Positions 1-57,200 of a stretch of DNA of 64,000 nucleotides are shown piece by piece. Origin of the DNA: Podarcis muralis (Eukaryota); the NCBI RefSeq assembly GCF_964188315.1, contig NC_135673.1, forward strand, positions 14,570,001-14,634,000, given 5' to 3'. The position numbers and the translations under genes were made by a program. The notes below the pieces were generated by a model that searched no databases, had not been told where the DNA came from, and worked only from the letters and a program-made list of their open reading frames with translations. Positions within the stretch are counted from its first letter, which is position 1, and the number at the start of each line of letters is the position of its first letter.

Positions 1-714
1 TATATATGTAAATAAAGTATAGGCAGCTTACCTTGGACCAAAATACATTTTAATGAGATGGTGGAAAGTTGAGAGAAATTCAAAGCGCACAGGCAAAGGA
101 GAAAATGGGGACCCTTTAAAAATAAATAATCAAGATTATGGTCTGCGAGCAAATTTCAAGAACTGTAGCTCTAAATCGTCCAACCCTTTTAAAAGTGAGT
201 GTTGGCTGGTGGAATTTAAGTAGCTATAATCATATTCAACTACCCTACAGATGAATAAAAATCTGAGCCCAGGATTGAGAGCCCACTCTGAATTGCGTGC
301 ATTGTTAAAGAGGAAAGGGGCGAGATTACTTGGAAGTGGCCTCAAATGCAAGAATGCTGTGCAGGAGCCAGTGACGGCACACCCATCAGCCATAAGGCCA
401 CAGAGGCTGCTACACAAGGTGGACACAAGAGTGTATGAGGGAAACAGCTGCTGAAGCAAACTGCTGTCTATTAAGAATCATCTCAGAGCTCAACACCACC
501 CTGCCAGCAAACACATGTTATAAGAAAAACATTCAGAAAGAGCAAAACATACTGTGAAAACAACTTTTATTTCGTGGCTTGGGGGTTCTATTCCCCCCCC
601 CAAAAAAATTGTTACCGTGCTTTTATTACTGTGTTGTCCTCCATCACTTGACAGAATGTTGCCCAGGAGCTTCATGTGACTCAGCCACCACACTCACCGG
701 CCCTCACATGGCTT

Positions 715-861
715 TCTCCAGTCTCTGCTGTACTGGCAGAGACTTCAGGATCTTCTTAGCACTACATGCAAAGCAAGGAATACTGTTGACATGGCATTTG
801 AGGTCTTGATAAAGGAACCTTTCTGAGCATCCTGAATCAACACATTCCAATTTTAATTTTA
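715..861 (-). pseudogene. SETX: Senataxin-like terminal coding exon, disrupted (two in-frame stops and a frameshift)
   Basis: After the acceptor ccctttgtag the minus strand reads *N*NWNVLIQDAQKGSFIKT, then in another frame KKILKSLPVQQR. Human SETX reads ENQHWNQLIQDAQKRGAIIKT...VKILKLKPVLQR. TAA AAT TAA replaces the first codons, and 47 nt instead of about 30 lie between IKT and KILK. Confidence 0.75.
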
Positions 862-1107
862 CTACAAAGGGATTAAACAACAACAACCAATGAATTATTA
901 GGACAGGAGACTAGCAAGGGTTGGTGGCGATTTATTTATTCTCTGCTGCGCTGCAGGAAAGTGGGAGTCTGACTGTGTGGGTCTTGGGTTTCCCTTGCTT
1001 TTGGAGTGCACCTCTCAACAGCTTTTAGCTGGGGGAAATGGGGGCCTTAGCCTGAAAAGTGTTCTTCACCCTTCCTCTAAGTCTGGCTGAATTAATCTAA
1101 AACACTA

Positions 1108-1417
1108 AAGGTAAAGGGACCCCTGACCATTAGGTCCAGTCGTGACCGACTCTGGGGTTGTGGCGCTCATCTCGCTTTATTGGCCGAGGGAGCCGGCGTA
1201 CAGCTTCTGGGTCATGTGGCCAACATGACTAAGCCACTTCTGGCAAACCAGAGCAGCGCACAGAAACGCCTTTTACCTTCCCGCCGAAGTGGTACCTATT
1301 TATCTACTTGCACTTTGAGCAACGGGAGCTCACCCCGTTGCGGGGATTCGAACCGCCAACTTTCTGATCGGCAAGTCCTAGGCTCTGTGGTTTAACCCAC
1401 AGCGCCACCCGCATCCC
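1108..1417 (-). mobile_element. Sauria SINE
   Basis: tRNA-like head (rc gggatgcgggtggcgctgtgggttaaacc), tail ggggtccctttacctt, and a 15-bp TSD taatctaaaacacta at 1093-1107 and 1418-1432. Confidence 0.9.
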
Positions 1418-3849
1418 TAATCTAAAACACTAGAGACCACTAATAATGGGTGTCAGGAGAAATGAGGTCAAACTTCCTCTGGATTGCACCCACTGGTAAA
1501 CAGTGGTTTGTGAACACACAACAGAGGATCCCTCCAATATGGCCGTACTCGGGCTATAAGGATCCTTCCCTCCTCACTGCAGTTACAAAACAAGCAGCAG
1601 CAGCAGCAGGGAAACGAGTGTTTAACAGGAATCCATTCACAACTCTGAACTTTACAGGAGCAAACCATCAATGCCAGGCCTTCCAATGGACAAACCTGGA
1701 TTGGAGGCCCTCTAGTGGCAAAGTCGTTATGGTACAAGGCTGGGGAAAAGGACCATATGAAGACTTTGCGCCCAATATGGGAGTAATTGTGACCTCATGC
1801 AGGAAAGTGCCAGGATGGAAAGAGGGGAGTCCCCCATGCCAGCTGCTTTATCCCCTGACTGGGCGCCTCCCTGGGAGAAAACTGGCAGGACAGGAGTCTG
1901 ATGGGACAGAGGCGACCAGCATGGCAGAGGACGGCATCCCTTTCTCTGCTCCCCTGCACACAGCTGGCATTCTAGCAGAGAGGAAGGAGTGGGGAACTTT
2001 TGTGGCCCTGCAGAAGTTGCTGAACTCCATCTCTCACCGCCCCTCATCATTGGCCAGGCCGGTGGGGCTGCTGGGCATCACACATCTTCAGGGCTGCAGG
2101 ATCCCCGGCCCTTACAGCATCTCACAAACACCTCCCAGAAATGCCATGCTGGGCCTTGCATGAAAAACCACAGTGTTCAATGGTCAGGAGTGATGGGAGT
2201 TGTAGTCCAGCAGCCCACAGCTTCCTTAGCTCTGGAATACCATACTGCCAGTCTAAGATCAACTGGTGAAAGAGCTAAAGTAACGTAAGTTTTACCATCT
2301 ATGAAACCCGAGTTTCAGGTTCCTCTGGGCGCCCACAAGCAGGGACAAAATTGAGATGGCACTGACCCCCCCCCATAGGACCTTCTTAGTGGTAGCTCCC
2401 TCTTTGTGGTGGCCCCCTCCCTGGGGTTCACTAAATCCCTGCATTTGTAAGTGCACTACTAAAAGGTTGCAGGCATTCCTACCAAGGTTTCCATGTCTAT
2501 GTATAATTTCAGTGGGCCTCCTCTGAGTAGAGACAACCCCCTGCTGTCATGTTTCTGCTTTACGTTTTTTATTGGAGGCCCTGATTTTGATCAATTTCGT
2601 TAGTGGTGAATATTTATTAGTGATGTTCATTTATACATGGTTTTTTCCCTTGCTTTGCAATATTTTAGCTTCTCTCTGCCTCCCCCATAGGTTCTTTATG
2701 AAATACCTTTTAAGATTATAATTTAAAACACTCAAAATGGTTGTTTATCGATAGCTTTAATTATCATTTAATTTAATTGTTCCTTGGGTGCCTCCTTTAT
2801 TGGACATCATTTGAGAGCCAAGTGAGAAGCTTGGGGCATAAATCTTAGAAGTCAGACCATGATCTCCTTTTGCAATTTCAGCTACACCCCCCCCCCCACC
2901 ATGTGGCTTCCAAGCACACAGTGCCCTTCCACCCCCCCCACCCCCCAGGTGGAAAGGAAGTGGGCTGCTGGTGGGAACCAGCTTTAGACCTTAGCCACAC
3001 ATCCCTGCAGCACAAACCATTGGCGAATTAATATTATTTGTTGTGATTCATGTGAAAACTCTCTCGTTAATATTTCAAAACTGTGCCTGAATATTTTATT
3101 CATTCCAAAGGTGACTTGCAAAACAGAAAGACACCATTAGCGCAGCTGTGACCTTTTTCTCCTTCTCAAGAAAACAGGAAAAACCCAAACCTGTAAAGGA
3201 AAACCAAAAGAAGTGCAGCCCTGTTTGCCTGATTTCACCCCATAATCCCTCCGTGGGGCCAACAATTCTGCCGGGTCACATCTGAGAGCACCAAACCCCT
3301 TGCCTGCCAGGGAGGACAGGGGTTTGGGGCTCCATTTCTCCTCTCCCCCAGTGAGACACAGCGGAAGAAGAAGCCTCAGAGAAGCCATTTTGCCAGTGTC
3401 AGGAATGGGAAGTTCATTGCAGTAAGAGAGCTGCAGTGACGAAGCTCACATGGCCTAGGCCTGCCCTCACCCCCTGCAAAGACTATTGTGGGACCACAAA
3501 CCTCTCCTCTCCTGAATTCCCTTATGGGCATCGCAGGTGGCTGCAAGAATGCGGCCAGAGACCAACAGGGGCTCTAACAGACAACTGTGACTTGTGGACA
3601 ATGGCCCACACACTTGACCACCCCAAGGATTGCACCCGAGCCCTAGAATTGCCAGCAGAGGCACCCCAGTTGACACATCACAAAACAACAGGAGATGTAG
3701 ACTGGAGAGGTTACCAGAGTCACTGAGTGGGCTGTTGCACCTCACTTGGCCCTTCTTTAAAATGGGAATATATCCTGTATTTAACACACTGCTGTTCCAT
3801 AAAGAAATGATTGGGGGTGGGGTATTTTTGTACTGAGCTATCAATCTGC

Positions 3850-4370
3850 ATACACTTCACAATCATCATCCAAGAAGAGAGATCCCTGCCCCAGGGAGCC
3901 TACAATGTACATTTTAACAACAGGGGAACAACAGAGAGAGAAGTTTTTATTTTATGAAATAAGTAAGTGCAGGCAAGTCCAGCAAGGGATGGCTGCCCAA
4001 GTGTTCTTCAGCAGCAGGGAAGGCCTCAGATGAAAGGCCTCACCAGCGACATCACTTTTGAAGGAAGATAGGGAGGGTTATGGCGCACTGCAAGTGTTCT
4101 TGGAGAGGGAGTTCCAGACACAAAGGGTCAGCGAGGAAGTATCAGGGGAGTTGTTCAAAGGAACAGGAGGCCTTCCGGCCACTGAGGGTGGTAGAGATGA
4201 AGGAGTGAAGGTCACTGGTCAGGTGTTCCAGAGAGCAGGGGAGATGGTGAGTGGAGGAGAGGCTTGTCTGCGGCTGCAAGGAGTGCGCAATCTCCACATG
4301 CAGAGGCAGTCCACCTCTGAAGACAAGGTGCCCAGCTTGTGGGTTTCCTAGAAGCATCTGGAGGCAGTCA
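3850..4370 (-). mobile_element. L2-type LINE 3' remnant
   Basis: Degenerate sequence resembling the reverse complement of an L2 3' region (gggagttccagacacaaaggg...); no intact ORF. Confidence 0.45.
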
Positions 4371-4371
4371 G

Positions 4372-4590
4372 GTGTAGTGGCTGGAGTGTTGGACTAGGAG
4401 CTGGGAGACCAGGCTTCAGATCCCTGCTCAGCCCTGAAAGTGGGCGGCCGTGGGCCAGTCACTGCCTCTCAGCCCAGCCTACCTCACAGGGCGGTTGTGG
4501 GAATTAAATGAGGAGAGGGAGAACCATGTACGGCACCTTGAGCTCCTTGGAGGAAAAGCTGGGATATAAATGCAATGAATAAATAAACTG
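4372..4590 (+). mobile_element. tRNA-derived squamate SINE (MIR/Squam3-like)
   Basis: tgtagtgg...gttggactagga...ggagaccagg head, cctacctcacaggg core and gggatataaatgcaatgaataaataaa tail; related copies at 21960-22157 and 54700-54995. Confidence 0.75.
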
Positions 4591-4855
4591 GACCCTTGGC
4601 TTCATCCAGCAGGGAGATTATGGACAGAGCTGGCTACCTATTGCACTTTTGTACACCACAGGGATGGGGAAACCCTGGCCCTCCAGGTGGTGCGGGACAG
4701 TATCCCCCACCCCCAATAGGCCATCCTGACTGGGGCTGTTGGGAGTCCAGCAGCATCGAGAGGGACACAGCAGGTTTCCCAGCTCTGATCCAAGAATTTC
4801 ACTAACAACAAAAAAAGAGCTCAGCAGCAGTAGCTTGGCATAAATATAGCTACTT

Positions 4856-5207
4856 AAAGGTACCCCTGCCTGTACTGGCCAGTCTTGCCAGACTCTAGGG
4901 TTGTGCGCTCATCTCACTCTATAGGCCGGGAGCCAGCGCTGTCCGCAGACACTTCCGGGTCACGTGGTCAGCGTGACGAAGCTGCATCTGGCGAGCCAGC
5001 GCAGCACACGGAACGCCGTTTACCTTCCCGCTGGTAAGCGGTCCCTATTTATCTACTTGCACCCGAAGGTGCTTTCGAACTGCTAGGTTGGCAGGCGCTG
5101 GGACCGAACGACGGGAGCACACGCCGCCGCGGGGATTCGAACCACCAACCTTTCGATCGGCAAGTCCTAGGCACTGAGGCTTTAACCCACAGCACCACCC
5201 GCGTCCC
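4856..5207 (-). mobile_element. Sauria SINE
   Basis: Full-length copy with a 12-bp TSD atatagctactt at 4844-4855 and 5208-5219. Confidence 0.9.
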
Positions 5208-5710
5208 ATATAGCTACTTGCCACTATACAAATCCAGACAAGCATCAAAGAGCACATAATTCAAGAGTAACGTTTCAGAAATGGTTAGAAAGAAAGATTA
5301 TTATTGTTTACGTATCAAATCAGGTTGCCAGAAGGAATCAGGATGGATGCCTATGATCATGTGCAGAATTTTCACTCACCTGAGTACTCACCTATAGTGC
5401 CTGAGCAAGTGTATTCCCCCCCCCCCTAAAACACACACACACACACACCCCGGATATGATGTCCAGGTGTTGCCAGACTACAAGTCCCCCCATCCCTGAC
5501 CACTGGCCCTTCTGGCTGGGGCTGCTGGACTCCAGCAACATCTGGAGAGCATAGCCGACCCACCACTGGACTTGGGGGTTCTGAAAAATCCAGGATAAAG
5601 TAGAACCTTTGTCCACATTCAGGTTCATTCGTCCACATTCATTCGTCCACTTCTTCTTCTGCAATGTCTGTTGAGGTGAGATAATCAATAACAAAAAGGT
5701 GACTATGCAC

Positions 5711-5898
5711 ATGTCAGTTTTCAAGGCACGGTTGTAGACGTAGTTAGAAGGGAAGAGGCAGATCTCAGGGTGCATCCTGTACTGAGTGGTCAAGCGCAGG
5801 ACTGGAAGCCTGTCAATGACTTTATTCTGGAGCTGCGCATCCAGCTGTCTGCACAGCCGCTCCATCAGAGACTGCCCGTAGCCGTATTCCTCAGCTCT
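5711..5898 (-). pseudogene. SETX: Senataxin-like helicase-domain exon (isolated, frame still open)
   Basis: 188-nt exon after the acceptor tttcccccattggcag. It encodes RAEEYGYGQSLMERLCRQLDAQLQNKVIDRLPVLRLTTQYRMHPEICLFPSNYVYNRALKTD, matching SETX KAQEYGYDQSMMARF...QYRMHPDICLFPSNYVYNRNLKTN. The donor is weak (AT|gtgcat), and there is no room for upstream SETX exons before SURF1. Confidence 0.85.
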
Positions 5899-6099
5899 CT
5901 GCCAATGGGGGAAAGAAGCAAGAGAAAGGAGGAGGAACGAGACTTTCAGTGGGTGGGTCAGGTGCAGACAGCAACTAAAGAACAACAGGTTGCCATGTGA
6001 AATTGCTCCCTGCTCAGGGTACAGTTAACAAAAACTACCCCAAGTAGCCACAAAATTAAGGGTTACAGAATACAATGGTCAGACTTAAGCTCTCAACAC

Positions 6100-6780
6100 A
6101 TGCCACCAGATACTTGACACCATTTGAAAATTAATTCTGAACCCAGATAAACCTTTTTTTAACTATACCCTACAAAATACTCAACAAATTAACATTGGGC
6201 AATATGATCCTGTAAAACAGTTGTGGGAATCTGATTTAGGCATTAAAATTGAAGAGATGGATAGGCAAGGCAAAAAAAGAAAAGAAAAAAGGTGAATCAC
6301 TCTCAACTCATATATGAGAGAATACATTTAAGCTATTACATATATGGCATCTGACCCCACTGAAATGCACCTGTATTAATAAATCACTCTCACCTTGGGA
6401 TTGGCAAGGTTGTAATACAATTGGTACAATTTTCCACATGGGGTGGACAAGAGAATACGCACAGCCTTTTTGGCAAAAGGTGTTCATATAAATAAGACAC
6501 ACCACAGAAGTACAGTGCACACCAAGTTTAGGACTGTTAACCACTTTCAGGGAAAAACAGCTTAACCTTTACTACAGATAACTGATCACTTATTGTGGCA
6601 GCACGCCTATCGGTGACACAGAATTGGAAGAGACTGGAACATTTACATGTTTTTCGCTGGAAACAAGTGTATGGACTGAGCAGCACAAGAGCAGCAGATG
6701 ACTTTATTGACATTTGGAATCCTTTCATTGAGTTTTCAAATGATAACCTGCACAACCGGCATCCACATACAGTACACGTG
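6100..6780 (+). mobile_element. L1-clade LINE ORF2 C-terminal remnant
   Basis: Degenerate translation FKLLHIWHLTP...WQGCNTIGTIFHMGWT resembles the L1 ORF2 C-terminal Cys/His motif. Confidence 0.55.
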
Positions 6781-7037
6781 TTCTCATAACACAGAAGAGT
6801 GCACGTGCCCGCTCCACGTTATCCCCAGGAGGCAGGACACTCAGCGCACGCAGCTCCCAACGGGGAGAACGCTGGCCTGACAACTATTAAAACTTCGGGT
6901 TTCCTGCCCTCATTGCCGCCATATGCGGGGTGAAAAGAGAGTGTTACTTATGCGGCGTCCTTCCCTCCTGAGACATTTCTATGTCCGTGAGGAGATGCTC
7001 TTTTTTAAATAATGATGACGATAATGATGATGTAAGG

Positions 7038-7102
<65 letters not shown>

Positions 7103-7620
7103 TGTTAGGCGGCGAAGGAGCTCCCTGTGTGTTCTGTGACGGAAGCGCCTCGTAAGACCCACCTCTAAGGAGCCTTGGGAGAGCGGAAGTCGCGTGACCC
7201 AGAAGAGGAAAGGCCCGTGAAAGGAGTCGGGGGTGGGAAATGTCTGTGTTTTTGCGGTTGCTAGGCGACTTTGCGCTGAGGGGGCCCTTGCGGGCGAAGG
7301 CGGGCCAGGTGGGAGCCGTTTTATTTTATTATTTCGATTTCAGTTTTTATTATTTTGGCCGTTTTCATGCTGCTAAATCACGGCTGTCTGTATAAAAAAA
7401 CCTCGATGCAACCGCAAATAGAAAATGAGTTAAAATTCATAAAAATCAGAATTCCGTTAAAATGCCTGTCGGGACAATCTTTTCCAAAGGCAGCTCCCGC
7501 ATAAGGCTGCACTGCCGTTTACCTTCGGGGCCTCTCGCAGCAGCCTGACAGGTGGCAATTCAACAGGTCGGGCACGGTTCTTCGTCCCCAGCTATGCGGG
7601 TGGAAGCATCTCCTGCTAAG
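6780..7620. promoter_or_regulatory. CpG-rich SURF1 promoter with ETS (GABP-type) motif
   Basis: High CpG density around the SURF1 ATG (7240), cggaagt at 7184-7190 and a (GT)n(GA)n tract at about 7040-7103. Confidence 0.7.
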
Positions 7621-10600
7621 GTTGCTTTTAAAAACCACAAAGATGATACAGGTCAACTTCGTTTATTAATTTGGGTAGATTAATGTGTCCATTCCTTGAC
7701 AAAAGCCTCTCCTAAGGGGTTTGCGTGATATTGCTAAGTTGTCATTGGTCTGGTCTCAACTCTTCCTGTGGCTCTTATGAGGGTTATTTCATTCCATTTC
7801 TTACACTTTAGATGTGTTGCAAGTTGCCTTGAGTAGCGCCGGACAAGTCTAATAAGTAATAATGTTGTGAAGTTCTTTTAACATTCAAAGTGCCTTTGAG
7901 GCACTAGGGTTATTTTCCTACACAACAGCCAGGTGAGGTAGGCCATCCACCTTTCTATGGATGAGGAAGGATGAGGATGAGAGAGAGAGTTACCTCTTTT
8001 TCTTCCCTTTTCTCTTTGTTTCTTGCCTGGTTTTTAACACTGGTATCATTGTTCATCTTTTGCAATTAACTCTTTTCCAAAAATGACATCTGAAATTCAG
8101 CTTCTTATAAGTTTCTATAATGTAAGGGGGGAATTCAATCAGCACCTTTTGTTTTGCTTTTAGCTCCCTTACTATGTCGGTGGAAGGACGTTGTTTGGAT
8201 GCACCTATTTTAAAGCACCTTCTGGCCTGCTACAACCACATAAAGGTGAATAAAACCCTTAATACTTCATAACATGTTGACTTAGGAGAAGCTTGTCTGC
8301 TGAAGCCTGGTTTCTGTTTTCTTAATTTTATTTGCACAGAGGAGGGTATCCAGATGGACCAAAGAAGATCAGCTTCTACTTTAGCTGGTCATATTTGCTA
8401 ACCGTATTCTATATTCAGGTTGCACTCCTGTATGTAGTTACCTGGGAGTAAGTTTTCTGGAATTCAGTGGGACTGACTTCTGAGTAGATATTTTAATTAT
8501 ATCTGTTTATTCATTTATTATTGTGACTTTTGAGTTGACATGTTCATTTTAGTTGTTGTTATCATCAAGTCATCTTTGTCGTCACCAGGTAGTTATTTAT
8601 TTATTTATTTTGTATGCCTTCCTTCAGGTAAATATTACAGGGCAGTTGACCACATAAAAATACAATTGAGAACAAAAAACATAACAAGGCCAAAAAAAAC
8701 CTCAATAACCCCCCTTCCCCCTCACACACACATTTAAAAGGCCATAGAATGTTAATCAGCCCAAGGCCTGGTTATAGAGAAATGTTTTCGCCTGGCACCT
8801 AAAGGTCAGTATTTTTTAAAAAAAATAATTTTTATTAAAGTTTGGAAAAAGGGATACAAAGAATATTATCTATTATATTTTTATCAAAACTAAAATGTTA
8901 GTCTAAATAAAAATGCAGACCAAAAAGAATAAGAAAAAAGAAAGGAGGAATAGAGAAGAGATAGAGGGGAGAAGGCAAGAGAAAGAGAGGAGATAAAGAA
9001 AAAGGAAGAGAGAAAGAAAAAGAGAGAGAGAGAGAGAGACAAAGAAAATAAAGGAACTTTCCATTCTGTCTGCTATATATAAACATTATTCTGATAATCC
9101 ACTCCAATATGTAATGAAGGTGCCAGGCATGCCTCCCTGGGGAGTGCATTCCACAAATGGGGATGCATCTGAGGCTGGTTAGGCAATGACCCATTGCCCT
9201 AATGTCTTCTGGCTACTGGCTGTAAAGGTTGGAAGCGTTGGAGATTGGTGGTTACTGCCATTTGCCATTTTTAAAACTCAGGTAGGTAAGAGAGCATCTA
9301 GGTGCATTCTCCCTTCCTTGGACCAGCAAAGTGGGTTTTTTTAATATTCCAGGGCCATCTCAGGCTCCAGGCAATTGAGGAAAATATTCTGCTGATTACT
9401 GAAATGAGGCAGCGAGGGCATAACTGCACTTTCCTCATGTTTGTTATGTCAGAACCATAGCAAGTTCTGTGGATCAGTTGCATAGCATCTGCCTTGCATG
9501 CTAAAAGCCCCAGCATCTCCAGGTAGGGCCGAGAGAGACCCATTGCCTGAAACCCTGGTGAGCTGCTGCCTGCCAGGGTAGACAGTACTGAGCTAGATGG
9601 ACCAAGGCCTGACTCAGTATAAGGCAGACACCTATGTTCCAGAATCACTAATACAAATAATAAGTTATTGCTGGATATTAATGAATCTGATGGTAGTGAT
9701 GAACCACGTACTGCACAGAGCTTCTTCCACAGATGACACAAACATTCCTCCTCCCCCCCTGTCGTTTTCCTCAGAGATTCCCCAGAGGCCTGCCTTGTCC
9801 AGGATTTCCACAGCTGCTTCTGCCAAATCTGGAGAGGATGCTGTGCTCAGGTGGGGCCTCCTCCTAATCCCCATAGCGACATTTTGCCTTGGAACGTGGC
9901 AGGTAAATGCAAACGCTGAATCTGAGGCTTGCTCTGTGAGGTCTCTTGATTCAGGGCCAGTGTTCAGAGATGTCTTCAGTTACAGCTCGTAGCCAGTGCA
10001 AGAACCTCTACTGTGAGTTGTTTCCAAAATTAGTCATTATCAAAGATTGATATTAACAGGCATTTCTATCATAGATACATTAATTTCATTCTGTTTGCCC
10101 AGTTTAACTTAATGGAATTCAGTCCAACTCATTTACTATTGGCTGATAACATGGAGTAGTTTTTATTTGAATAGAACTAATAAGCATTTGGAGTGCCGGG
10201 CGTGCTCTGGTCCATGGGGTCACAAAGAGTCCTAAACGACTAAATGACTAAACCACAACAACAACAAATAAACATTTACGGAATTTGAGAGGAGGAACCC
10301 ACATTTTCCTTCAAATGTGCATTTTGTTTTGCTTCAAAGGAGGAAACAGAAAAGCTTAAGTTTTTTGTAATGCAAATACTTCTGTAGTAAATCAGCTATC
10401 CTGCCTTGGTGGGAGGGAAATTTTGTGCTGGGGAGGGCAAATGTACGTCTGGTGTTGCCCTCAAGGCCCCTAAGAGCCCTTATGCCCATGTCAGATTCAA
10501 CGGCGGAAATGGAAGTTGAAGTTGATCTCTGATCTGGAATCCAAGGTGGCAGCAGAACCGATCCCACTCCCAGCAGAGTAAGTATGTGAACTGGCTTGGA

Positions 10601-13600
10601 ATCAATTACCGTATTTTTCGCCATATAGGACGCACTTTTCCCCCTCCAAAAATGAAGGGGAAATGTGTGTGCATCCTTTGGGGCGAATGCAAGCTCCTTG
10701 GCTTCAGCGATAGCAACACGAAGCCTACGAAGCCTGCGCTCCGGAGGCTTCGTGTTGCTTTCGCTGAAGCCAGGAGAGTCTGCTCTTTGAGGCTGGCGGT
10801 AGGGGGAAAGCAGTGCTTCCCCCCACCGCCAGCCCCACAAGCTGGGGGGGGGGGCAGCGGGAAGGCGTGCAATGCCTTCGCGCTACTCTCCGACCTGGTT
10901 TGGAGGCTGGCGGTGGGGGAAAGCAGCACTCTCCCACCCCCCCAGCCCTACAAGCTCAGTCGAAAAACCCACAGGAGCCGCGCGCTCTTTAAAGGGTGCG
11001 CGGCTCCTGTGGGCTTTTGCAGGAGATGGGGGAATTCCCCCACCTCCCGCAAAAGCACGCAGAAGCCGCGCGCTCTTTAAAGGGTGTGAGGCTTCTGCTG
11101 GCTTTTCTATGGGGGGGGGGAATTCTCCCCCCTCGTAGAAAAGCCCGCAGGAGCCGAGCACCCTTTAAAGAGCGCGCCACTCTTGGGGGCTTTTCCCCGA
11201 GGAGGGACAAGGGACTGACTGGCCGTTTCAGTCCCTTCTCCCTCCTGGTCAAAAAGCCCACAGGAGTTGCGCACGGCTCCTGTGGGCTTTTGCGGGAGGT
11301 GGGGGAATTCCGCCACCTCCCGCAAAAGCAGGGAGAAGGTCTTGGAGTAGCGCACAGGCTGCGTGCAGTCTGTCCGCTGCTCCCAGAGCTGCGGGGGGGG
11401 GGGGGGATCATATTTTTTTCCTTGATTCCCCCCCCCCCTGAAAACTAGGTGCACCCTATGGGCCGGTGCACCCTATAGGGCGAAAAATACAGTAAACGTG
11501 TGGAGGGTGTGTGCTGCTTTTCAAAGTGCCACTTTAAACAAAGTAGCCCTTTTTATATTCTGCAGAATTTAAGTCGGTGAAGCTGTTCCTTGCCTTGGGC
11601 TGCAGCTTAGCCTCTCTTTCAAACCTGCTGCTTTCTGTCCTTTGACAGCTTCTCGGAGCTAAAGGAGTTGGAATACAGACCTGTCAAGGTCCGAGGGTAT
11701 TTCATTCATGACAAGGAGCTGTACATCCTTCCACGTTCGTTGGTTGATTCAGAGAAAGAAGCCAGGGATGCTGGCCAGCTGATGTCCAATCCTGAGAGTG
11801 GTGCCAATGTCATCACACCCTTTTACTGTATAGACCTTGGGTAAGTATATTAACTGACAAACAATTTGGGCCACTGCCCTGTACTCATTTACTGGCAAAC
11901 AATCTCTGTTGAAATCTGGGGCACTTGGCTGAGCAGACATGCATAGGATCGTGACATTAGAGAGGATCAAGGCCCTTCAGTAAATACAGTCTGTATATAT
12001 TCAGATTCTGCCTCATAACCATGAGGACCTGAAATGTTCTGCACTGTTTTTATTTAAGTCATTCTCTGGATTCTGTAAAAGGAGTCATAGCTTGTTTCAG
12101 AATGTACTTAAACCTGTGATGATCCGTTTTTGTTTTTTAACTTTTCCAAAAGTATAAGTGAAATTACATGAATTTAATTATAGGAGATAGGCATATCTCC
12201 TATTATCAAATGTATGTAATTTCACTAATATGTCTGAATTTTGCCTAGCATAGGTTTCTTTCACGTTGATAACAATGTCTGAACCATCATAACGTAAAAT
12301 GTCAATTTTCCAGGCACCTGACCATGTTAGTCTGTTGCAGAAAACAACAAGAAAGAATCCTGTATCTTCAAGGCCAACAGATATCTTCTGCCCTAGAACC
12401 TACTCTAAGGTGCATGGGCTGGTTAGCTAAGTGAGTGGATCTACTCTGAGCACAGAGAGGAGAGAGAAAAACCATTGCTGTGGAGTCAAAAGCCAAGTTA
12501 CATGAAAGAGAACTGTTAGTATGTTAACAGTACTATGTAGGGCACTCATAATAGAATCCAAACAGAGTCCAATCAAATTGCCACAATGCAATGTTGATGG
12601 CTGTGTTCTTAACTCTTCCCAGCTGGCTAGCAAAAATAAGTTTTATATAAATGGACTTGTGAGTAAGCCAAATTGAATAAATGATGCTTGCTTCTGAGTT
12701 TAGAATTACAATGTTTGGTGCCTTACAGCAGAAGTGGACCCTCCAGATGTTGCTGAAGTACAACTGCCATCGGCCCCAGCCAACATACCCAACAGCCAGG
12801 GGTACCTGGAGTTGTAGTTCAGCCAAGATCTGGCATGCCAAACATTGTCCACTCCTGCTTTAGGGGGCTTGGATGCTTCCATGCTTACAGAGTTTATTGT
12901 CTTCTCTCATTCCCTTTCCCCCTGACCCTGCAGGATCACAATCCTTGTCAACAGAGGGTTTGTCTCCAGAAAGAAACTTAAGCCAGAGACTAGGTTGCGA
13001 GGACAGGTAGGTAGCAAGGGATGGAAACTACCACATTATATATCATAAGATATTGTGTTCTTTTTTTAAAGGACAGAAACTGCTATTTGACTCTTCCTTG
13101 TAGATCGAAGAGGAAATTGAGCTCACAGGGGTGGTGAGGCTGTCGGAAACCCGCAAGCCATTTGTTCCAAAGAACGACATTGAAAGGAATCGTTGGCATT
13201 ACCGGGACCTGGATGCCATGGCAAGAGTGACAGGAGCTGAGCCCATCTTCCTTGATGCAGACTTCAGTGAGTTCCCCAAGGACCTGGCTGTGTAGTCTTG
13301 GCTTTTAATAGGAGTGGACTGCAACAGGCTCCTGACTTTGGGCCCCATCTGCATTTAAAACAGTATCATACCACTTGACACGGTCATGGCTCCCCTCAAA
13401 GAATTCTGGGAACTGTGGTTTGTTAACAGTACTGAGAGTTGTTAGTAGCCCCCCCCCCCCTTCCTCTCCCAGAGCTACAGCTACTAGTGGTTTAATAGTC
13501 AATCCCTCTTCCCAGGGAACTCTGAATCATAGCTCTGTGAAGGTAAGTTGGGATGGGTGATATATCGATACTTTGTTCCTTACCAATATGAACTCCAGAC

Positions 13601-19836: not shown

Positions 19837-24900
<5,064 letters not shown>

Positions 24901-50181: not shown

Positions 50182-50993
50182 CAAAAGACGCCGTTCTTGG
50201 CCTAGCTGCCTTGAAGCGGCTTTTAGGACTGGCTTTCCAAGGGTCCCTCAGGTAAGGTTCGCTGTCGGGTGAGAGAGGGGCAATGGCGGGAAGAGATGAG
50301 TTGAAGAGGAGAGCCCCCCCCCAATACGTTACAATGAGTTGCGATCCTTTCCTTTGCCCTAAGGGGGAAAGTAGCCACACGCCCAGCTAAGCATTCTGGG
50401 AGAGCAGCACATGGAACGAATCCGTCCCTCCCATCACATTTAGTTTGGATCTCAAATGTATCCCTCGTGGCAGGACCTGATGCGAGCCACAAAGGCCATT
50501 TTTCTCCTCTCCCCAACAGGACTTGGGGGGGGGACCCCACTTTTGTTTATTGCCTAATTGCATTTGATGATTTGCGTGAATAAGTGCTGTAAATAAATTT
50601 GCACAATTAAATGCAATCATTAATTTTATAAATAAATGACAGTTTTATTTAAAATTGCTCAGGGCACTGGCACCCAGATAGGTAGATGGCAGATAATGGG
50701 GAGGGAGTCCACAGTTGCAAATAAGACTACAGCTATAATATCATAAAACTCTACTGAAATACACTGGCATTTACTGCTGATATATGAGTCAGTTTGAGGT
50801 GCCATGCAATTACAAAAAAGTCTTGTTCACAGCAGTATCTCCCCCACTCGCCATTCCCAACATCACTCAAGGAATGACACCAAACCATTCAATTATTTCT
50901 TTCTTTCTCTTTCTTTGCATTTTCCTTTTTCCCAGCTAACCCAAGAAAAAGTTCAGCCGCAAACCAATCGAGCGCCTAGGAAAAGTCTGCAAC

Positions 50994-51293: not shown

Positions 51294-54200
51294 GATCCTG
51301 CAAGCCTTCGGTTTGCCCACCACTAGACTTAAACTCCGGCAGAGGCAGTTGCAAAGTTGGGTTAGAGCAGTCTTTGCAAACCTAGTGCTCTCCAGGTGTT
51401 TTGGACTAAAGTTCTCATCAGTCCTAGCCAACACAGGGTGAAGGCTGCATGAAATTTGTGTCCTAATTCTTTGTAGGATGTCTTGCACAGGATCACTTGG
51501 GGAGTATCTTGTTCATTATGGTCTGTATCAACCATTTTAAGATAATACCCTCAAATCAATGTGAAAACATCTGGAGAGACTTCAAGTCCATAAACTTGTT
51601 CTAAGTAATGGTTCTAATTTCATGTTGCTATTAGACTTTTCCCAAGAAATGACAGGCTACTTGCTATTGTTGCAGTTCATTGTATTTTAAATTACATGTA
51701 AAAGCAATAAAACATATTCTAAAAGAAGAAGAAGACTTAACACATTTAAGCTTTTAGGGTGTGAAAGTCACCCAAAGTCTCTTTGGCATATTCTTCTCCC
51801 TGCTGGTCTCATATGCCTTCAGCTTGACTGAAGACAGTGTATACTTTCATTTGAGGAGCGACAGGGTTTGTACAACCTGACACATCTCTGTACCAAGGCA
51901 AAAATGTGGCAAGTCCTTATCAGAGAGATGTTTGCAGAGGACGCAGCCTTGACAGTGCACTCCAAGGAAGCTTCACAAAGACACAAGCCTGCATGAAATT
52001 TGGCCATACCACCAGTCTGATGAAGACCAACATCCTGGGTGAGAACGCCGCCAGCACAACCTTTCCATTAATGCTGAGCTGGACAAGCATATTGGCAAGA
52101 CAGCTTTGGCAATGGCTTGCCTCTCCAAAGGGTATGGGAGAATGTGATGCTAACATCTAATACCAAGATGAAGGTCTACCAGGTTTGCGTGTTGAGCTCG
52201 CTGCTGTTGCACACTGTGTGTTGACTTGTGGGCAACTTACAACTGCCAGGAGCAGTGCCTCAATGCCTCTCACATGTGCTGCATCAGGAAGATTCTGGGC
52301 ATCACATGGCAAGACAGAGTTTAAAACAAAGATGTGCTCTCCCAGGCCCACAATCCCAGCATGTACACATTCCTGTCTCAGCAACATCTACGCTGGCTTG
52401 GTCATGTCCACAGAATGGAAGATGGAAGAATCCCCAAGGACAGTGGTGTCCAAACTTTTTTCAAAGAGGGCCAGATTTGATGAAGTGAAGGGCCGACCCC
52501 GGGAAATAAACTGCCGCAGGGGCCGGATTAGGCACCCAAAATGGACTTTCTACATGCCTGTCCAAGGATGTGCTCTGCCGGAAGCTGGTTTCATGAACTA
52601 GGCTTGTTGGCAGACCAACTCTCTGTTACAAAGATGTCTGCAAATGTGACAAGAAGGCTGGCAACATCAACCCTGTGTGGGAATTCCTTGCAGATGACTG
52701 CAGTGCCTGGAGACAGTCAATCTGGTCATGGGAGGAATGATCACTGGAAGGAGCGCAGAGGGAAGAAACACCATAGTGCTTCTACAGCGGCACAGCCAGG
52801 CACCTTCATCTGCCCCAGCTGCAACAAAACCTCTCTCTCCCATATCGGTCTCTCTTCACCCACAAAGGCACACTCCTCTATTGTCTCCTAAGACAGATGA
52901 ACGCCAACACAAGCTTTTGGGGACTCATGCTCACTTCATCACATAGGTGAATTGAAATCTTAGTATACATGTTTATAAGGGAGAAAATTGTAATGTGGGA
53001 GTTGTATGGCAAAATCTTTCCCCTTATTTTTTTGCATCTCATTGCCATTCAAACCCTGCCTTACAATTTTCTCCTTTATTCACTTGCCAACTTTCACTTC
53101 ATTAACCTTGAACAAGATGCTTTAATTCTAGCTATTAAAAAATGACAACAATATATTATGAAGAATTAAATCAGGGTGTGACTCATAAGTACTTAACTTT
53201 GCTTAGCAAGTGCCCTCTGTTTCTGGTGAGTATAAGCATGCCCTCTTTCACCTTAAAGGAAGAAGTCTAATTATTTTTATTTTGGCTTTGGCTAGATAAA
53301 CCTTGTGCGCACTCTGGGAGAAGCGAGAAGCAAGATAGCCCAGTACAAGCTTCCGCAGATCCCAGGAACGATTCCGCTGGTGAGGGATGTGGAAACCTGC
53401 TCAGGCAATGGGTTTTTATCACATCGTCAGCAGATGTGGGTTGAGGGAATGCCCAATGATGACGTCACTGAAAATCCAGTGCAATACAAGTAAGGAACAG
53501 AGTTATGATGTTATTCTGTGCTGTTAGGCCTGTTGGCCAAATGTGGCCTCTTTACTTGACCCTTGGAACTTTTTCCAGGCCACACCCCTCACTCACCCTT
53601 ACTTCAAATCCCAAGTGTTTTGACCTGACTGGAATGTGTTCTTGAACTCTAATAATGTCTCTTGCTTCAGGTTTCTCCCACTCTGTTTCTATTCCAGAGA
53701 GGCTGCAACACTGGCATTTTTAAAGACTCAAGAAAGTGAAAATGTTATTGCTGCCCGGGAAGTCCGAGGCCTTGCTGAAGTCATAAGTAAATGTTTACCA
53801 ATTTAATTCTGGCACCATAATCAGTGTTTTTAGCAAATGTGGTATCTTTCATTTATGCAGACTACCGGCTATACTACTGCAAAGTACTCTGCTTGGGGCT
53901 TCCTTTGAAGACAGCTCAGTAACTGCAGCCAGTGCAGAGCACCACTGCTCAGTTTTTGGCCAATACCTTGCCAGTTGCACTGGTGGCCACTGCATTCTCA
54001 CACTCAGTTCAATCTGATGGTGATAGTCTTTAAAACCCAAAATTGTTTTGCTGATAGTAACACCTTGAACTTAGGCTGTTACCAAATGGGCCACCAGTGC
54101 AGATCTTTGAGCAGAAGTGTTATATGCTGACAGGGCCTCCTGTCAACAACCATGCTGCAGCATTCTGCACTAATTTTAGTTTCAAACCCACACAGAGTTG

Positions 54201-57200
54201 ACTGCAGTAATCCAATCTTGAAGTCACCAGTGCCTGAACTATTGTGGTCAAGCCCTCCCTTTTTATTGTCTCTAAGCCACTTATATGTTTTATTACAGTT
54301 AGTTAAATAAAAGAATGAGTAACTATGAACTTGTGCATAAAACTGAAGATGGAACTAAAATGTGGCAGGCTTCTTTGGCAGCATGAGAATGTCAGCTAAC
54401 CCAGTGGTTTTGTAAAAAACCCCAAAACACATTACTCTCTCTTTATGCTAGCCTGGCATGAGTTCTACAGCTGTGCATACAATCTAATCTCCCTCCCTCC
54501 TTCCCAGTTCCTGAGAAGAAAAACAGTGACATTGTGGAACGTATCTCAGAGAGCAGGAGGTGCCGTTACGAAGAGACGGTGGTGACGCTACGGCAGGAAT
54601 TGGCACGTGTTGGGAAGGTAGGCAGCCCCCTTCACCACTTTAGTGCATCACTATTGATAGTACTAGGGATGGGATAATCTGTCCATTTGCAATGTGAAGC
54701 CAATGTGGTGTAGTGGCTTGAGTGCTGGACTAGGACCTGGAAGACTAGGGTTCAAATTTATCCACTTGGCCATGGAGGTCTCTGAGTGACCTTGGGCTAG
54801 CCACTCACTTATGTGACACATTTTTCTAATACATACATATTTGATGCACATTGTTTCGTTCAAGCCTTGTTTCGTCCAAGCGTAACATAACTCACAGGGT
54901 TGTTGCTGCGAAGATAAAATGGGGAGAAGGAGAACCATGTACATCACATTGAGCTTCTTGGAGGAAGGTTGGGATATAAATGTAATAAAGAAATAAAATT
55001 CAGTTCTCTCCGTTTCTCATTTCTTTCTATCTTAAATTCAGTTTTCCACCTTTTGCAATAATTTGTGAATCTTTGCTTTAAATCTTCATGAAAATATGCT
55101 ACTGCTTTAGTACGGATCTCTCCAAATGTTTTGTGTTCAGTTTTGACTATATAGTTTTATGCAAGAAATTCCCCCTTATGTGCATTTTCATTTTATTTTT
55201 CATTTATGTGACACATTTTTCTAATACATACATATTGATGCACATTGTTTCATCCAAGCCTTGGCAAGTGTTACCCATCAGATCATCTTCTCTGTTTCAG
55301 GAAATGGAGGTGTGTTTCTTGGAGCCTGGGAAGCTATTTCTCACCAAGCTGTCAGAATCCGATCGCACCATTGAGTCCCTTTTCCAAGTTTCCGCTGAGA
55401 ACCTCCACTTGGAGACTTACACCATGGAGGTGAGGGAGTGCCTCGCAACTCAAACTGAAACAGGGCTTGAAGGCTGCCTGCCACCTTTTCTTGCCCCTCT
55501 GGCTGATACTTCTGGTGACCCTAGATCCTCACTGCTTAGCAACAGGGATGAAGGGCCTGGCAGTCACTGTGGGTAGCAGAATAAGGCATGCTGGAGATAG
55601 GAACATAGGAAGCTGACATACTGCATCATCCCATTGACTTATTTAGCTCAGTATTGTCTACACTGATTGGCAGCAGCTTTCCACTGTTTCAAGTTGGAAG
55701 TCTCTCCTTGGAGATCCCAGGGCTTGAACCTAGGAACATGGAGAACTTCCTTATACTGAATCTATGCATTTTTCTACCTCAGTATTGTCTACACTGACTG
55801 GCAGCAGCTCTCCAGAAAGTCAGGCAAGGGATATTCCCAGCCTTACCTGGAGATGCCAGGGATCAAACCCAGGGACTTCCTCATGCAAAACAGATAGGCT
55901 GCCACTCAGCTACAGCCCTTTCCAGGAACATAGAAAGCTGCCTTATACAAAGTCAGACCATTGGTCCATTTAGCTCAGTATTGTCTACACTGACTGACAG
56001 CAGCTTTCCAAGGTTTCAAGCAGGGGCATTACCAGCCCTACCTGGAGATGCCAGCAATTGACCCTGGGACCTCCTGCATGCAAAGCAGATGCTCTACTAA
56101 GCTACAGCCCTTCCCTCCAAAGGCTGTGACACATGGGCGTAGCCGGGGGGGGGGGGCAGAGGGACAGCTGGCCCTCTAAATCAATACAAATAAGTACGAA
56201 TATGAGGTTTCCCCCCCCCCCAACAAAAGCCTGCCTCCCCAACAAAAATCCTGGCTACGCCCATGGCAGTGAACAGTACAGTGGGATGGGTTGAAAGGAT
56301 CTGGCATGCCAACAAAGATCAGCTCCCCTGTGTGGAAATCACATCCCATTTCTACCTTGCAGGACTTTGAGAGAATGTGGAACCTTGTCTCCAAGGAGAC
56401 CTTAAAAAGAAGGCAGTGGATTAGAGAGCTGGACAAAGCCTTACTCAAGGCAGAGGTAGATCGAACTGAACGGGTAAGTATAAGAAGATGCTAACAGAGA
56501 GTACATGAATGATTGTTGGGGGGGGGGTGTGCAGCTGTATGCTTGTTGCCTAGAAGGAAATGCAGCATCAGCATGTTGCCCAGAAGGAAATGCAGCCCTT
56601 GGAGCTGGAAAAAGTTCCCCATCCCTGCTATGGCTCCTTGAAAGGGTCAGAAATAGTTGTTTCTTGCTGGCACATATGTCTTTTTAGGAATTGGCCACTT
56701 CAGTGAGATGGTGGAGGTTGGTCTCTTTAGGTGAATGGGCCATTGCCTCACCACTCTCATTCTGTCTTCAGCCAATTTGCACCTGCCTTCCTCCTTACTT
56801 ACAAGGAGTCTAGGGGGTTGCCCCAGCTGTTAGCTTCCCCCTGCATAGACTCAAAGTGCCCCTTGTGGAACTCTTCGGGGAGAATGATGAGAATAAAAGC
56901 TAGAATTGGTTGGCTCTGCCTGTCATTGACTCTGGTTCTACCTATCATTGGCTATGGCTCTGCCTACACTACAGCTTTCATCCCTGCATTCCACCTCACC
57001 CATGGCCACTGGTTACCACTGGCTGAGTAGCCCAGTGGGGTGGTCCCCCAGCATGTCCCTAGCAATCTCAGCAGAGAGGTGTCCTCACCATCCTTAACAC
57101 TTTTCTTACCCCCTCCCTCTGCTTTGGTTTCCAGATCAAACTTTTGTTGAACAAATATAATAAGATCCTGGATGATATTTCCTATATCCTACCCTCTGAT

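What the first reader, a model, noticed from the sequence alone, without database searches (positions are those of the whole stretch)
715..5898. Truncated, unprocessed SETX duplicate sits where SURF2 should be
Seen: two intron-separated senataxin exons on the minus strand. One is a 188-nt helicase exon with an open frame and a good acceptor; the other is the terminal exon with two stops and a frameshift. Only about 1.3 kb, mostly L1 remnant, separates the first exon from the SURF1 start, so the long N-terminal part of SETX cannot be present. I could not find the intervening exons. Known: human SETX is in the same 9q34 region but not adjacent to Surfeit. Inference: this is a partial segmental duplicate left at a rearrangement breakpoint that split the Surfeit cluster. 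The uneven decay between the two exons is unexplained.
Basis: partly seen in the sequence, partly recalled or inferred. Interest (0 to 1): 0.72.

Follow-up and report, generated by a model that had tools for sequence, protein, structure and literature searches.

The report
Senataxin gene relic at inversion breakpoint
This is a dead 3' fragment of the senataxin (SETX) helicase gene, left beside SURF1 by an old chromosome inversion in lacertid lizards; one of its exons still looks intact because the working SETX gene, about 0.75 Mb away, keeps overwriting it by gene conversion.

Summary
Window 5711-5898 (-) is an open 188-nt SETX helicase exon. Window 656-872 (-) is a decayed SETX terminal exon. 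The four exons that should lie between them are deleted.

It is a partial, unprocessed duplicate. Full-length SETX exists elsewhere in Podarcis, Lacerta and Zootoca, and RNA contigs from the window's own species show a second copy.

The relic sits in the ancestral SETX position, next to an NTNG2-like gene, as full-length SETX does in the outgroup Rhineura. SURF1 was brought to it.

In P. lilfordi, relic and parent are inverted repeats flanking a 0.78-Mb segment. A reciprocal SURF1 exon-2 fragment lies just 3' of the parent SETX. This is the signature of an inversion made by staggered breaks.

The "uneven decay" is explained by gene conversion:
- **Introns and helicase exon:** these evolve in concert with the parent. 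Quartet sites are 159 by species against 6 by copy.
- **Terminal-exon island:** this 220-bp stretch escaped conversion (3 against 20). It is about 26% diverged from every parent and dates the event to about three times the Podarcis-Zootoca split.

There is no sign of selection on the relic and no relic-specific transcript. This is a new example of known mechanisms. The locus is already auto-annotated in Podarcis as a short "probable helicase senataxin".

The parts
148..594 (-). Ancestral SETX 3' flank, towards the NTNG2-like neighbour that lies off the window
   Evidence: 66% identical to the region 1.4-1.8 kb 3' of the Rhineura SETX stop codon (L005 62129-62569). In P. lilfordi the Laminin_N/EGF gene follows 3.9 kb further on.
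656..872 (-). SETX terminal-exon relic (residues 2155-2225 equivalent). It has stops, a frameshift, and the C-terminal 121 codons deleted. This is the island that gene conversion never reached.
   Evidence: K2P distance is 0.26-0.30 to all lacertid parents, but 0.02 to the P. lilfordi relic and 0.11 to the Zootoca relic. The relic clade has 100/98 support. Quartet sites are 3 by species against 20 by copy.
939..1110 (-). Last-intron block B5, homologous to the parent SETX intron
   Evidence: 92.5% identical to L003 57832-58004. Quartet 11:0:0 by species.
1106..1418 (.). SINE insertion, absent from the P. lilfordi and P. raffonei homologues at this site
   Evidence: many copies in all loci.
1418..2426 (-). 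Intron block B4. At 2426-2440 lies the junction of a deletion of about 810 bp, seen only in the window, that removed exon C4 (motif VI).
   Evidence: C4 is intact in P. lilfordi (L001 14175-14261) and recognisable in Zootoca.
2440..3692 (-). Intron block B3. Exon C3 is deleted at 3692-3708.
   Evidence: 95.6% identical to L003 54788-56032. Quartet 42:1:0.
3865..4796 (-). Intron block B2. The junction of the old 2.3-kb deletion that removed exons C1 and C2 lies at about 4796-4855.
   Evidence: The junction sequence is shared by the window, P. lilfordi and Zootoca.
4855..5207 (.). SINE insertion specific to the window lineage, with an 11-bp target-site duplication
5208..6020 (-). Block B1, holding helicase exon H (5711-5898). 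The stretch 5538-5968 is converted; 5238-5487 keeps copy-specific sites. The 5' end of the duplicated segment is at about 6020.
   Evidence: The 5' junction is identical in the window, P. lilfordi and Zootoca.
5711..5898 (-). SETX helicase exon H (188 nt, start of the AAA_12 domain), open frame
6128..6700 (+). Probable tail of a non-LTR retrotransposon ORF2 (weak evidence)
   Evidence: No Pfam hit. Shared with Zootoca.
7185..7309 (+). SURF1 transcription start and exon 1
   Evidence: RNA contigs start at 7185-7207 and end at the donor at 7308. ATG at 7240.
9197..9946 (+). The end of the second duplicated breakpoint segment. It holds SURF1 exon 2 (9775-9902) plus 44 bp of the next intron.
   Evidence: An inverted copy lies 0.56-0.7 kb 3' of the parent SETX stop in P. 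raffonei, P. lilfordi and Zootoca, with a sharp shared boundary.

Best explanation
Window about 600-6020 (-) is the left-behind 3' part of the ancestral senataxin gene.

Origin. Early on the lacertid stem, an inversion of about 0.8 Mb was made by two pairs of staggered breaks.
- One pair bracketed the SETX 3' part, from 120 bp 5' of helicase exon H to shortly after the stop codon.
- The other pair bracketed the SURF1 5' part, from upstream of the promoter to about 44 bp into intron 2.
Fill-in and end-joining duplicated both intervals, so both genes stayed whole. The spare SETX 3' copy remained next to the NTNG2-like gene and now abuts the SURF1 promoter. The spare SURF1 5' copy now abuts the 3' UTR of the relocated, functional SETX.

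Decay. The spare SETX copy is a pseudogene. It lost exons C1+C2 and C3 before Podarcis and Zootoca split, and it lost C4 in the lineage of the window genome. It also lost the end of its terminal exon.

Gene conversion. Its introns and exon H have been repeatedly overwritten by non-allelic gene conversion with the functional gene, which lies in inverted orientation on the same chromosome. That is why exon H is open and near-identical to the parent. The 220-bp terminal-exon remnant is boxed in by indels, escaped conversion, and has decayed at the neutral rate since the inversion.

Shown: identity, structure, shared junctions, inverted reciprocal duplicates, concerted evolution. Inferred: the staggered-break mechanism, the age, and non-function.
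For: Identity and truncation.

Parent genes: full-length SETX is present in P. raffonei, P. muralis, P. lilfordi, L. agilis and Zootoca.

Second copy in the window's own species:
- One RNA contig follows window 5908-6008 and leaves it exactly at the duplication boundary.
- Another lacks the relic's private 5-bp deletion and its private T at 5706.

Ancestral layout: in Rhineura the order is Myb gene | SETX | Laminin_N gene. In P. lilfordi it is SURF1(-) | relic(+) | Laminin_N gene(-).

Positions on P. lilfordi OX395140.1: SETX(-) lies at 35.471-35.525 Mb and the relic(+) at 36.250-36.255 Mb, so they are inverted repeats about 0.78 Mb apart.

Reciprocal duplicate: SURF1 exon 2 with flanks is copied in inverted orientation directly 3' of the parent SETX in three species. 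The boundary is shared, and order and orientation are as the model predicts. The model is that of Ranz et al. 2007 (PMC1885836).

Single origin: the 5' junction and the C1-C2 deletion junction are identical in three species, and the stops are shared.

Concerted evolution: informative quartet sites, given as by species: by copy: other, are B1 23:5:1, B3 42:1:0, B3b 38:0:1, B4 45:0:1, B5 11:0:0, but B6 3:20:0. In the trees (Zootoca relic, Zootoca parent) has 100/100 support and (P. lilfordi relic, P. lilfordi parent) 100/99 for introns, while B6 gives a relic clade at 100/98.

No selection on exon H:
- P. lilfordi relic against its own parent shows 0 synonymous and 5 non-synonymous differences.
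- In the window, exon H is no better conserved than the adjacent intron: 5/188 against 20/613 differences, p = 0.81.

No relic-specific RNA: depth is zero over 5921-7120, and there are no joints from exon H to any place in the window.
Against: - The SURF1 side of the ancestral state was not seen in any outgroup. The neighbour beyond the SURF1 5' relic is now a REXO4-like gene in an orientation that a single inversion from the human-like order does not give. At least one further rearrangement must be assumed.
- Only about 750 bp of the expected 3.9-kb SURF1 5' duplicate is still recognisable, and L. agilis lacks it.
- The Zootoca relic locus lies on a different 9.3-Mb record, without SURF1, as a 100%-identical inverted pair. 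It may be a secondary copy or an assembly problem.
- NCBI predicts 82-100 aa products with three isoforms at this locus in P. muralis, which hints at transcription there.
- Only four RNA data sets, each read at about 12%, were examined. The age rests on about 220 sites.
Confidence: 0.8

Rival explanations
1. The fragment is a working short gene. A transcript driven by the SURF1 bidirectional promoter is spliced through exon H and encodes an 82-100 aa senataxin-derived peptide, or acts as a regulatory RNA. On this view exon H is kept open by purifying selection.
For: - Gene models with alternative first exons joined to exon H and exon C4 exist in P. muralis (XP_028571759-62) and P. lilfordi.
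- One such first exon (ATGTGGATGCCGGTTGTGCAG|gt) is conserved at window 6757-6777.
- Skipping C1-C3 keeps the frame.
Against: - Exon C4, one third of that ORF, is deleted in the window genome.
- Changes specific to the relic in exon H are mostly non-synonymous (0 synonymous, 5 non-synonymous in P. lilfordi).
- The flanking intron is as conserved as the exon.
- RNA depth is zero over all candidate first exons, and there are no relic joints.
- The peptide would lack the ATP-binding motifs.
Confidence: 0.06
2. An inverted partial copy of SETX was first inserted beside SURF1 by an ordinary segmental duplication. The 0.8-Mb segment was later flipped by homologous recombination between the two inverted copies, perhaps repeatedly.
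For: Inverted repeats that flank an inverted segment and still exchange sequence are also what recombination-driven inversions look like.
Against: - The relic, not the full gene, keeps the ancestral 3' flank and the NTNG2-like neighbour.
- A second, reciprocal duplicate of SURF1 exon 2 sits at the other junction, in the order A-p-q' ... p'-q-D that staggered breaks predict. A recombination origin does not call for it.
Confidence: 0.1
3. The fragment is an assembly artefact: a misjoin, or a collapsed or duplicated contig placing SETX 3' sequence beside SURF1.
For: The Zootoca locus shows a suspicious 100%-identical inverted pair on a separate record.
Against: - The same junctions, deletions and stops appear in three independently assembled genomes.
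- RNA contigs of the window's species resolve two distinct versions that differ by private indels and part exactly at the boundary.
- DNA runs from seven studies hold the 5300-7300 stretch that spans the junction.
Confidence: 0.01
4. The relic arose recently and independently in each lineage, so its similarity to the parent reflects youth rather than gene conversion.
For: Relic and parent introns are 95-98% identical within a species.
Against: - The 5' junction, the C1-C2 deletion junction and the terminal-exon stops are identical in the window, P. lilfordi and Zootoca.
- The terminal-exon island groups strictly by copy, with K2P 0.26-0.30 to the parents.
Confidence: 0.02

Closest known systems
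Inverted duplications at inversion breakpoints made by staggered breaks (Ranz et al. 2007, Drosophila melanogaster group; PMC1885836)
   Same: Formerly single-copy gene fragments from both breakpoints are present at both ends of the inverted segment, in opposite orientation. Both broken genes survive because the overhangs were filled in.
   Different: This case is in a vertebrate and is much older. Both spare fragments are still exchanging sequence with their functional parents across about 0.78 Mb.
Unprocessed pseudogenes that exchange sequence with their parent genes (my own recollection of human examples: CYP21A1P/CYP21A2, GBAP1/GBA1, SBDSP1/SBDS)
   Same: A disabled partial or whole duplicate is kept close to the parent in sequence by non-allelic gene conversion. 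Converted and unconverted patches form a mosaic.
   Different: Those pairs lie tens of kb apart. Here the partners are about 0.78 Mb apart and inverted, and flow from relic to parent, the direction that causes disease in humans, was not demonstrated.
Concerted evolution of palindrome arms on sex chromosomes (from my own knowledge)
   Same: Arm-to-arm gene conversion between inverted repeats persists over long evolutionary times.
   Different: The spacer here is hundreds of kb holding many essential genes. The arms are 0.75-8 kb gene fragments rather than whole amplified genes.
Database entries for this very locus: P. muralis XP_028571759-62 'probable helicase senataxin isoform X1-X3' (82-100 aa), P. 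lilfordi CAI5794154/5, Zootoca LOC132591440
   Same: They are the orthologous locus, built on the same exon H and, in Podarcis, exon C4.
   Different: They are automatic protein-coding predictions. None records that the locus is a breakpoint relic, and the window genome has lost exon C4, so those models cannot be built here.

Membership tests
Senataxin (SETX) orthologue, i.e. a functional SF1B helicase gene | Complete helicase core (AAA_11 plus AAA_12, motifs I-VI) and the long N-terminal region | tested here: not met
   Only residues 1943-2004 and a broken 2155-2225 remain. tblastn of the 2346-aa parent finds nothing else in the 64 kb. Homology ends about 120 bp 5' of exon H.
Senataxin-derived sequence, as opposed to another SF1 helicase | Best match to SETX, with intron collinearity to the SETX gene | tested here: met
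   98% identical to P. raffonei SETX, against 74% to the other SETX-like paralogue and E 1e-3 to UPF1. Five intron blocks are collinear with the parent locus.
Unprocessed (duplicated) pseudogene | Keeps intron-exon structure, and an intact parent exists elsewhere in the same genome | tested here: met
   Parents are present in five lacertid assemblies. A second copy in the window's species is shown by RNA contigs.
Unprocessed (duplicated) pseudogene | Disabling lesions and no purifying selection | tested here: met
   Four exons deleted, plus stops and a frameshift. Relic-branch changes are near neutral. The exon is no better conserved than the intron. The counts are small.
Unprocessed (duplicated) pseudogene | Not expressed as its own stable transcript | tested here: inconclusive
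   No relic-specific reads or joints in four runs, but sampling was shallow and P. muralis has predicted isoforms.
Staggered-break inversion with breakpoint duplications | The two copies lie in inverted orientation at the two ends of the inverted segment | tested here: met
   P. lilfordi chromosome coordinates and strands.
Staggered-break inversion with breakpoint duplications | A reciprocal duplicate from the second breakpoint, in the predicted order and orientation | tested here: met
   The SURF1 exon-2 block lies 3' of the parent SETX in three species.
Staggered-break inversion with breakpoint duplications | An outgroup shows both regions single-copy and not inverted | tested here: inconclusive
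   Rhineura shows SETX beside the NTNG2-like gene and no SURF1 fragment 3' of SETX. The SURF1 side of an outgroup could not be fetched.
Interlocus gene conversion (concerted evolution) | Paralogues within a species are more alike than orthologues between species, with unconverted patches that group by copy | tested here: met

The most novel reading that the evidence does not exclude
The two pairs of inverted breakpoint repeats are not inert scars. They may still mediate recurrent flipping of the 0.78-Mb SETX-Surfeit segment in lacertids, giving inversion polymorphism or toggling. They may also pass relic mutations back into the essential SETX and SURF1 genes. Alternatively, the SURF1 promoter may drive a conserved senataxin-derived micro-protein in Podarcis.
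Probability: 0.1. Interest if true: 0.6.

Novelty: new member of a known kind. Interest (0 to 1): 0.4.

Why it matters
- **A clean vertebrate case.** Both ends of an old inversion can be read at base-pair level. Both broken genes were rescued by breakpoint duplication, and both leftovers are still recognisable.
- **A caution for annotation.** An open, well-spliced exon in a gene fragment can be a by-product of gene conversion rather than a sign of function. This is relevant because pipelines already call this locus a "probable helicase senataxin" protein.
- **A dating tool.** The unconverted island gives an internal clock for the event, and a marker that should be shared by all Lacertidae.
- **Context for SURF2.** It frames the loss of the SURF1-SURF2 head-to-head pair in wall lizards, which another report of this scan links to a SURF2 retrogene.

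Tried and rejected
- **PDB sequence search** with the exon found only UPF1 at E 1e-3 and no solved SETX.
- **Search for SURF2 remains.** A motif recalled from memory (TGHE/GHELP) found nothing in any locus. Pfam on all minus-strand ORFs of window 6300-7300 found no SURF2. Reading ORFs by eye in the 4.3 kb between L. agilis SETX and the REXO4-like gene showed nothing recognisable. I had no SURF2 reference protein, so this blank is weak.
- **Pfam on the putative L1 frames** found nothing.
- **Glu-45 as a derived marker of the relics.** I first took it as one. Outgroups show Glu is ancestral and Asp is derived in some Podarcis parents, so I dropped the idea.
- **The window 9245-9946 match as a transposon.** I first suspected this. 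I rejected it because the match contains SURF1 exon 2, is single-copy apart from an internal SINE, and has a sharp boundary shared across species.
- **P. lilfordi SETX isoform P0131** was not on record. The longest isoform, P0249, worked.
- **Terminal exon from the other SETX-like paralogue.** I checked whether the relic's terminal exon came from P0004/P0128. Those proteins end after exon C2, so it did not.
- **Joined models.** Spliced SURF1 and relic models were searched exon by exon.
- **Constraints.** No contig was taken to be human.

Full report
**1. What is in the window**

On the minus strand, 5711-5898 reads RAEEYGYGQSLMERLCRQLDAQLQNKVIDRLPVLRLTTQYRMHPEICLFPSNYVYNRALKTD without a stop. 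A strong pyrimidine tract and cag precede it, and gt follows it. It is the start of a Pfam AAA_12 domain (E 7.5e-11).

A search of 1.84 billion representative proteins put senataxins on top. The 2346-aa Podarcis raffonei senataxin (XP_053229668.1) matches at 61 of 62 residues, positions 1943-2004. Other SF1 helicases are far behind: 74% for a second SETX-like paralogue and E 1e-3 for UPF1.

tblastn of the whole parent protein against the 64 kb finds only one more piece, at 656-872 (-). It corresponds to residues 2155-2225 and carries stops and a frameshift. No other exon is present. The SURF1 ATG is at 7240, and RNA contigs start at 7185-7207.

**2. It is an unprocessed, truncated duplicate**

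The parent locus in P. raffonei (L003) has this 3' exon series:

| Exon | L003 coordinates |
|---|---|
| H | 50306-50491 |
| C1 | 52185-52277 |
| C2 | 53038-53208 |
| C3 | 54680-54778 |
| C4 (motif VI) | 56160-56246 |
| terminal | 58263-58841 |

The window is collinear with this stretch in five intron blocks at 92-96% identity. It lacks exactly the pieces that hold C1+C2 (2.3 kb), C3 (about 270 bp) and C4 (about 810 bp). Homology begins about 120 bp 5' of exon H, at window ~6020, and this junction is identical in three species.

The same locus is annotated as a short gene in three lacertids:
- P. muralis: "probable helicase senataxin X1-X3", 82-100 aa.
- P. lilfordi: 97 aa.
- Zootoca vivipara: LOC132591440.

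Full-length SETX genes exist elsewhere in P. raffonei, P. muralis, P. lilfordi, Lacerta agilis and Zootoca.

For the window's own species (a wall lizard, according to notes of this scan), RNA contigs show a second version:
- One contig follows window 5908-6008 and departs exactly at the duplication boundary.
- Another lacks the relic's private 5-bp deletion and its private T at 5706.
- An mRNA contig joins exon H to 205 nt that are not in the window.

**3. Where it sits and how it got there**

In the outgroup Rhineura floridana the order is Myb gene(-), SETX(+), Laminin_N/EGF (NTNG2-like) gene(-). From memory, SETX has the same 3' neighbour in human.

In P. lilfordi the order is SURF1(-), relic(+), NTNG2-like(-). 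Window 148-594 is still alignable to the Rhineura SETX 3' flank. The relic is therefore the part that stayed at home.

In all four lacertids the full gene has a REXO4-like RNase_T gene on its 3' side instead.

On the P. lilfordi chromosome the full gene (-) lies at 35.471-35.525 Mb and the relic (+) at 36.250-36.255 Mb. They are inverted repeats at the two ends of a segment of about 0.78 Mb that has SETX at one end and SURF1 at the other.

The second breakpoint left its own duplicate. Window 9197-9946 contains SURF1 exon 2 (9775-9902...[23 protein letters not shown]) plus 44 bp of the next intron. This block is copied in inverted orientation 0.56-0.7 kb 3' of the SETX stop codon in P. raffonei, P. 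lilfordi and Zootoca, with one sharp boundary shared by all.

The resulting order is p-q' at one end and p'-q at the other. This is what the staggered-break model of inversion predicts (Ranz et al. 2007, PMC1885836). Fill-in of two staggered breaks duplicates both intervals and leaves both genes intact. A recombination origin between pre-existing repeats does not predict the reciprocal SURF1 fragment, nor that the relic keeps the ancestral flank.

**4. Why one exon looks new and the other old**

I cut the duplicated region into blocks and compared relics (window, P. lilfordi, Zootoca) with parents (P. raffonei, P. lilfordi, L. agilis, Zootoca) and with Rhineura.

Percent identity in the intron blocks B3, B3b and B4:

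| Comparison | Identity |
|---|---|
| Relic vs parent, within P. lilfordi | 97.4-98.4% |
| Relic vs parent, within Zootoca | 95-97% |
| Relic vs relic, between these species | about 92-93% |
| Parent vs parent, between these species | about 92-93% |

Informative sites in the quartet (P. lilfordi relic, P. lilfordi parent, Zootoca relic, Zootoca parent):

| Block | By species | By copy | Other |
|---|---|---|---|
| B1 | 23 | 5 | 1 |
| B3 | 42 | 1 | 0 |
| B3b | 38 | 0 | 1 |
| B4 | 45 | 0 | 1 |
| B5 | 11 | 0 | 0 |
| B6 (terminal-exon block) | 3 | 20 | 0 |

Maximum-likelihood trees agree. For introns, the clades pairing a relic with its own species' parent have 100/100 and 100/99 support. For B6 there is a relic clade with 100/98 support.

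Within B1 the by-species sites lie at window 5538-5968, a span that contains exon H. The few by-copy sites lie at 5238-5487, next to the old deletion junction.

This mosaic is the signature of repeated non-allelic gene conversion. Yet the relic's junctions, deletions and stops are shared by three species, so the relic itself is old.

In the window's species the exchange is very recent. The expressed SETX mRNA contig is identical to the relic over all 188 nt of exon H, including a codon (AGA) seen in no other species.

Selection is not needed to explain exon H:
- P. lilfordi relic against its own parent shows 0 synonymous and 5 non-synonymous differences.
- Relic-branch changes overall are close to the neutral ratio.
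- In the window the exon is no better conserved than the adjoining intron: 5/188 against 20/613 differences, p = 0.81.

The terminal-exon remnant is about 220 bp. On one side a 247-bp versus 67-bp replacement separates it from the converted region. On the other side the rest of the exon is deleted. A short island without flanking homology is a poor substrate for conversion, which explains why it decayed.

**5. Age**

K2P distances in the island:

| Comparison | K2P distance |
|---|---|
| Relic vs any lacertid parent | 0.26-0.30 |
| Window relic vs Zootoca relic | 0.11 |
| Podarcis parent vs Zootoca parent | 0.10 |
| Lacertid parents vs Rhineura | 0.21-0.24 |

The relic stem is about twice as long as its crown. 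The event is therefore roughly three times as old as the Podarcis-Zootoca split, which the Zootoca genome paper puts at under 40 Ma (PMC7643610). That places it early on the lacertid stem. This rests on about 220 sites and is a rough figure.

**6. Expression**

I laid two stranded RNA-seq runs and two contig sets on window 1321-7320.
- SURF1 exon 1 has depth 10-17.
- Exon H has depth 1-2, on the SETX strand.
- Depth is zero from 5921 to 7120, which includes the first exons used by the Podarcis gene models.
- No joint links exon H to any place in the window.
- The contigs that cover exon H continue into sequence that is not in the window, so they come from the parent mRNA.
- In the window the donor of the "MSQE" first exon reads GG, not GT.
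- Exon C4, needed for the Podarcis ORF, is deleted.

I conclude that the relic is a pseudogene in this genome. Low-level transcription elsewhere is not excluded.

**7. Open points**

- I could not see the SURF1 side in an outgroup.
- The present REXO4-like neighbour, and its orientation, require at least one more rearrangement than the single inversion. So I cannot say whether this inversion or an earlier event parted SURF1 from SURF2.
- Another report of this scan (s1-152588, not checked here) says lacertids rely on a SURF2 retrogene.
- The Zootoca relic locus is odd. It is a 100%-identical inverted pair with a 21-kb spacer, has no SURF1, and lies on a 9.3-Mb record other than the SETX chromosome.

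**8. Verdict**

The mechanisms involved are all known: inversion with breakpoint duplication, pseudogenisation, and gene conversion. The locus is already auto-annotated. This makes it a well-resolved new example rather than a new kind of thing.

Noticed in passing
L003 59576-59701 (-), L007 64776-64901 (-), L006 64312-64424 (-): A near-intact pseudo-copy of SURF1 exon 2 lies just 3' of the functional SETX gene in P. raffonei, P. lilfordi and Zootoca. In P. lilfordi it shares derived bases with that species' real SURF1, so it too seems to undergo gene conversion. L. agilis lacks it.
   Followed up: yes
P0004, P0127, P0128 (P. raffonei, 31.6-Mb chromosome): A second, older truncated SETX-like paralogue (249-965 aa) corresponds to SETX residues 1-367 plus 1461-2087 at 65-73% identity and ends after exon C2. 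It is unrelated to the relic in the window.
   Followed up: partly
L002 1-4838 and 25914-34563 (Zootoca OY735920.1): The Zootoca relic segment is present twice as a 99.9-100% identical inverted pair around a 21-kb spacer. SURF1 is not adjacent, and the record is a 9.3-Mb one different from the SETX chromosome. It could be a real palindrome, a secondary copy or an assembly artefact.
   Followed up: partly
window 5730: All RNA-seq reads of two runs, and half the depth of one contig set, read A instead of G here (CGT to TGT, Arg to Cys in ..YNRALKTD). Another run has only G. This is probably a polymorphism in the expressed SETX gene.
   Followed up: partly
window 21240-23021 (-): Two SNORD36 and two SNORD24 box C/D snoRNAs. 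This is the usual intronic cargo of RPL7A and places RPL7A on the minus strand downstream of SURF1.
   Followed up: no
window 10694-11206: A cluster of nested inverted repeats (self-complementary at 72-86%), MITE-like. Related copies occur in the 3' flanks of the parent SETX loci.
   Followed up: no
window 56043-56111 (-), 9474-9640: A tRNA-like hit and related SINE heads. The same SINE family supplies the insertions at 1106-1418 and 4855-5207 and is heavily represented in RNA reads (depth in the hundreds).
   Followed up: no
window 7025-7105: A compound (GT)n(GA)n microsatellite lies between the SURF1 promoter and the candidate divergent first exons. Homology with the Zootoca relic locus ends here (about window 7100).
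   Followed up: no
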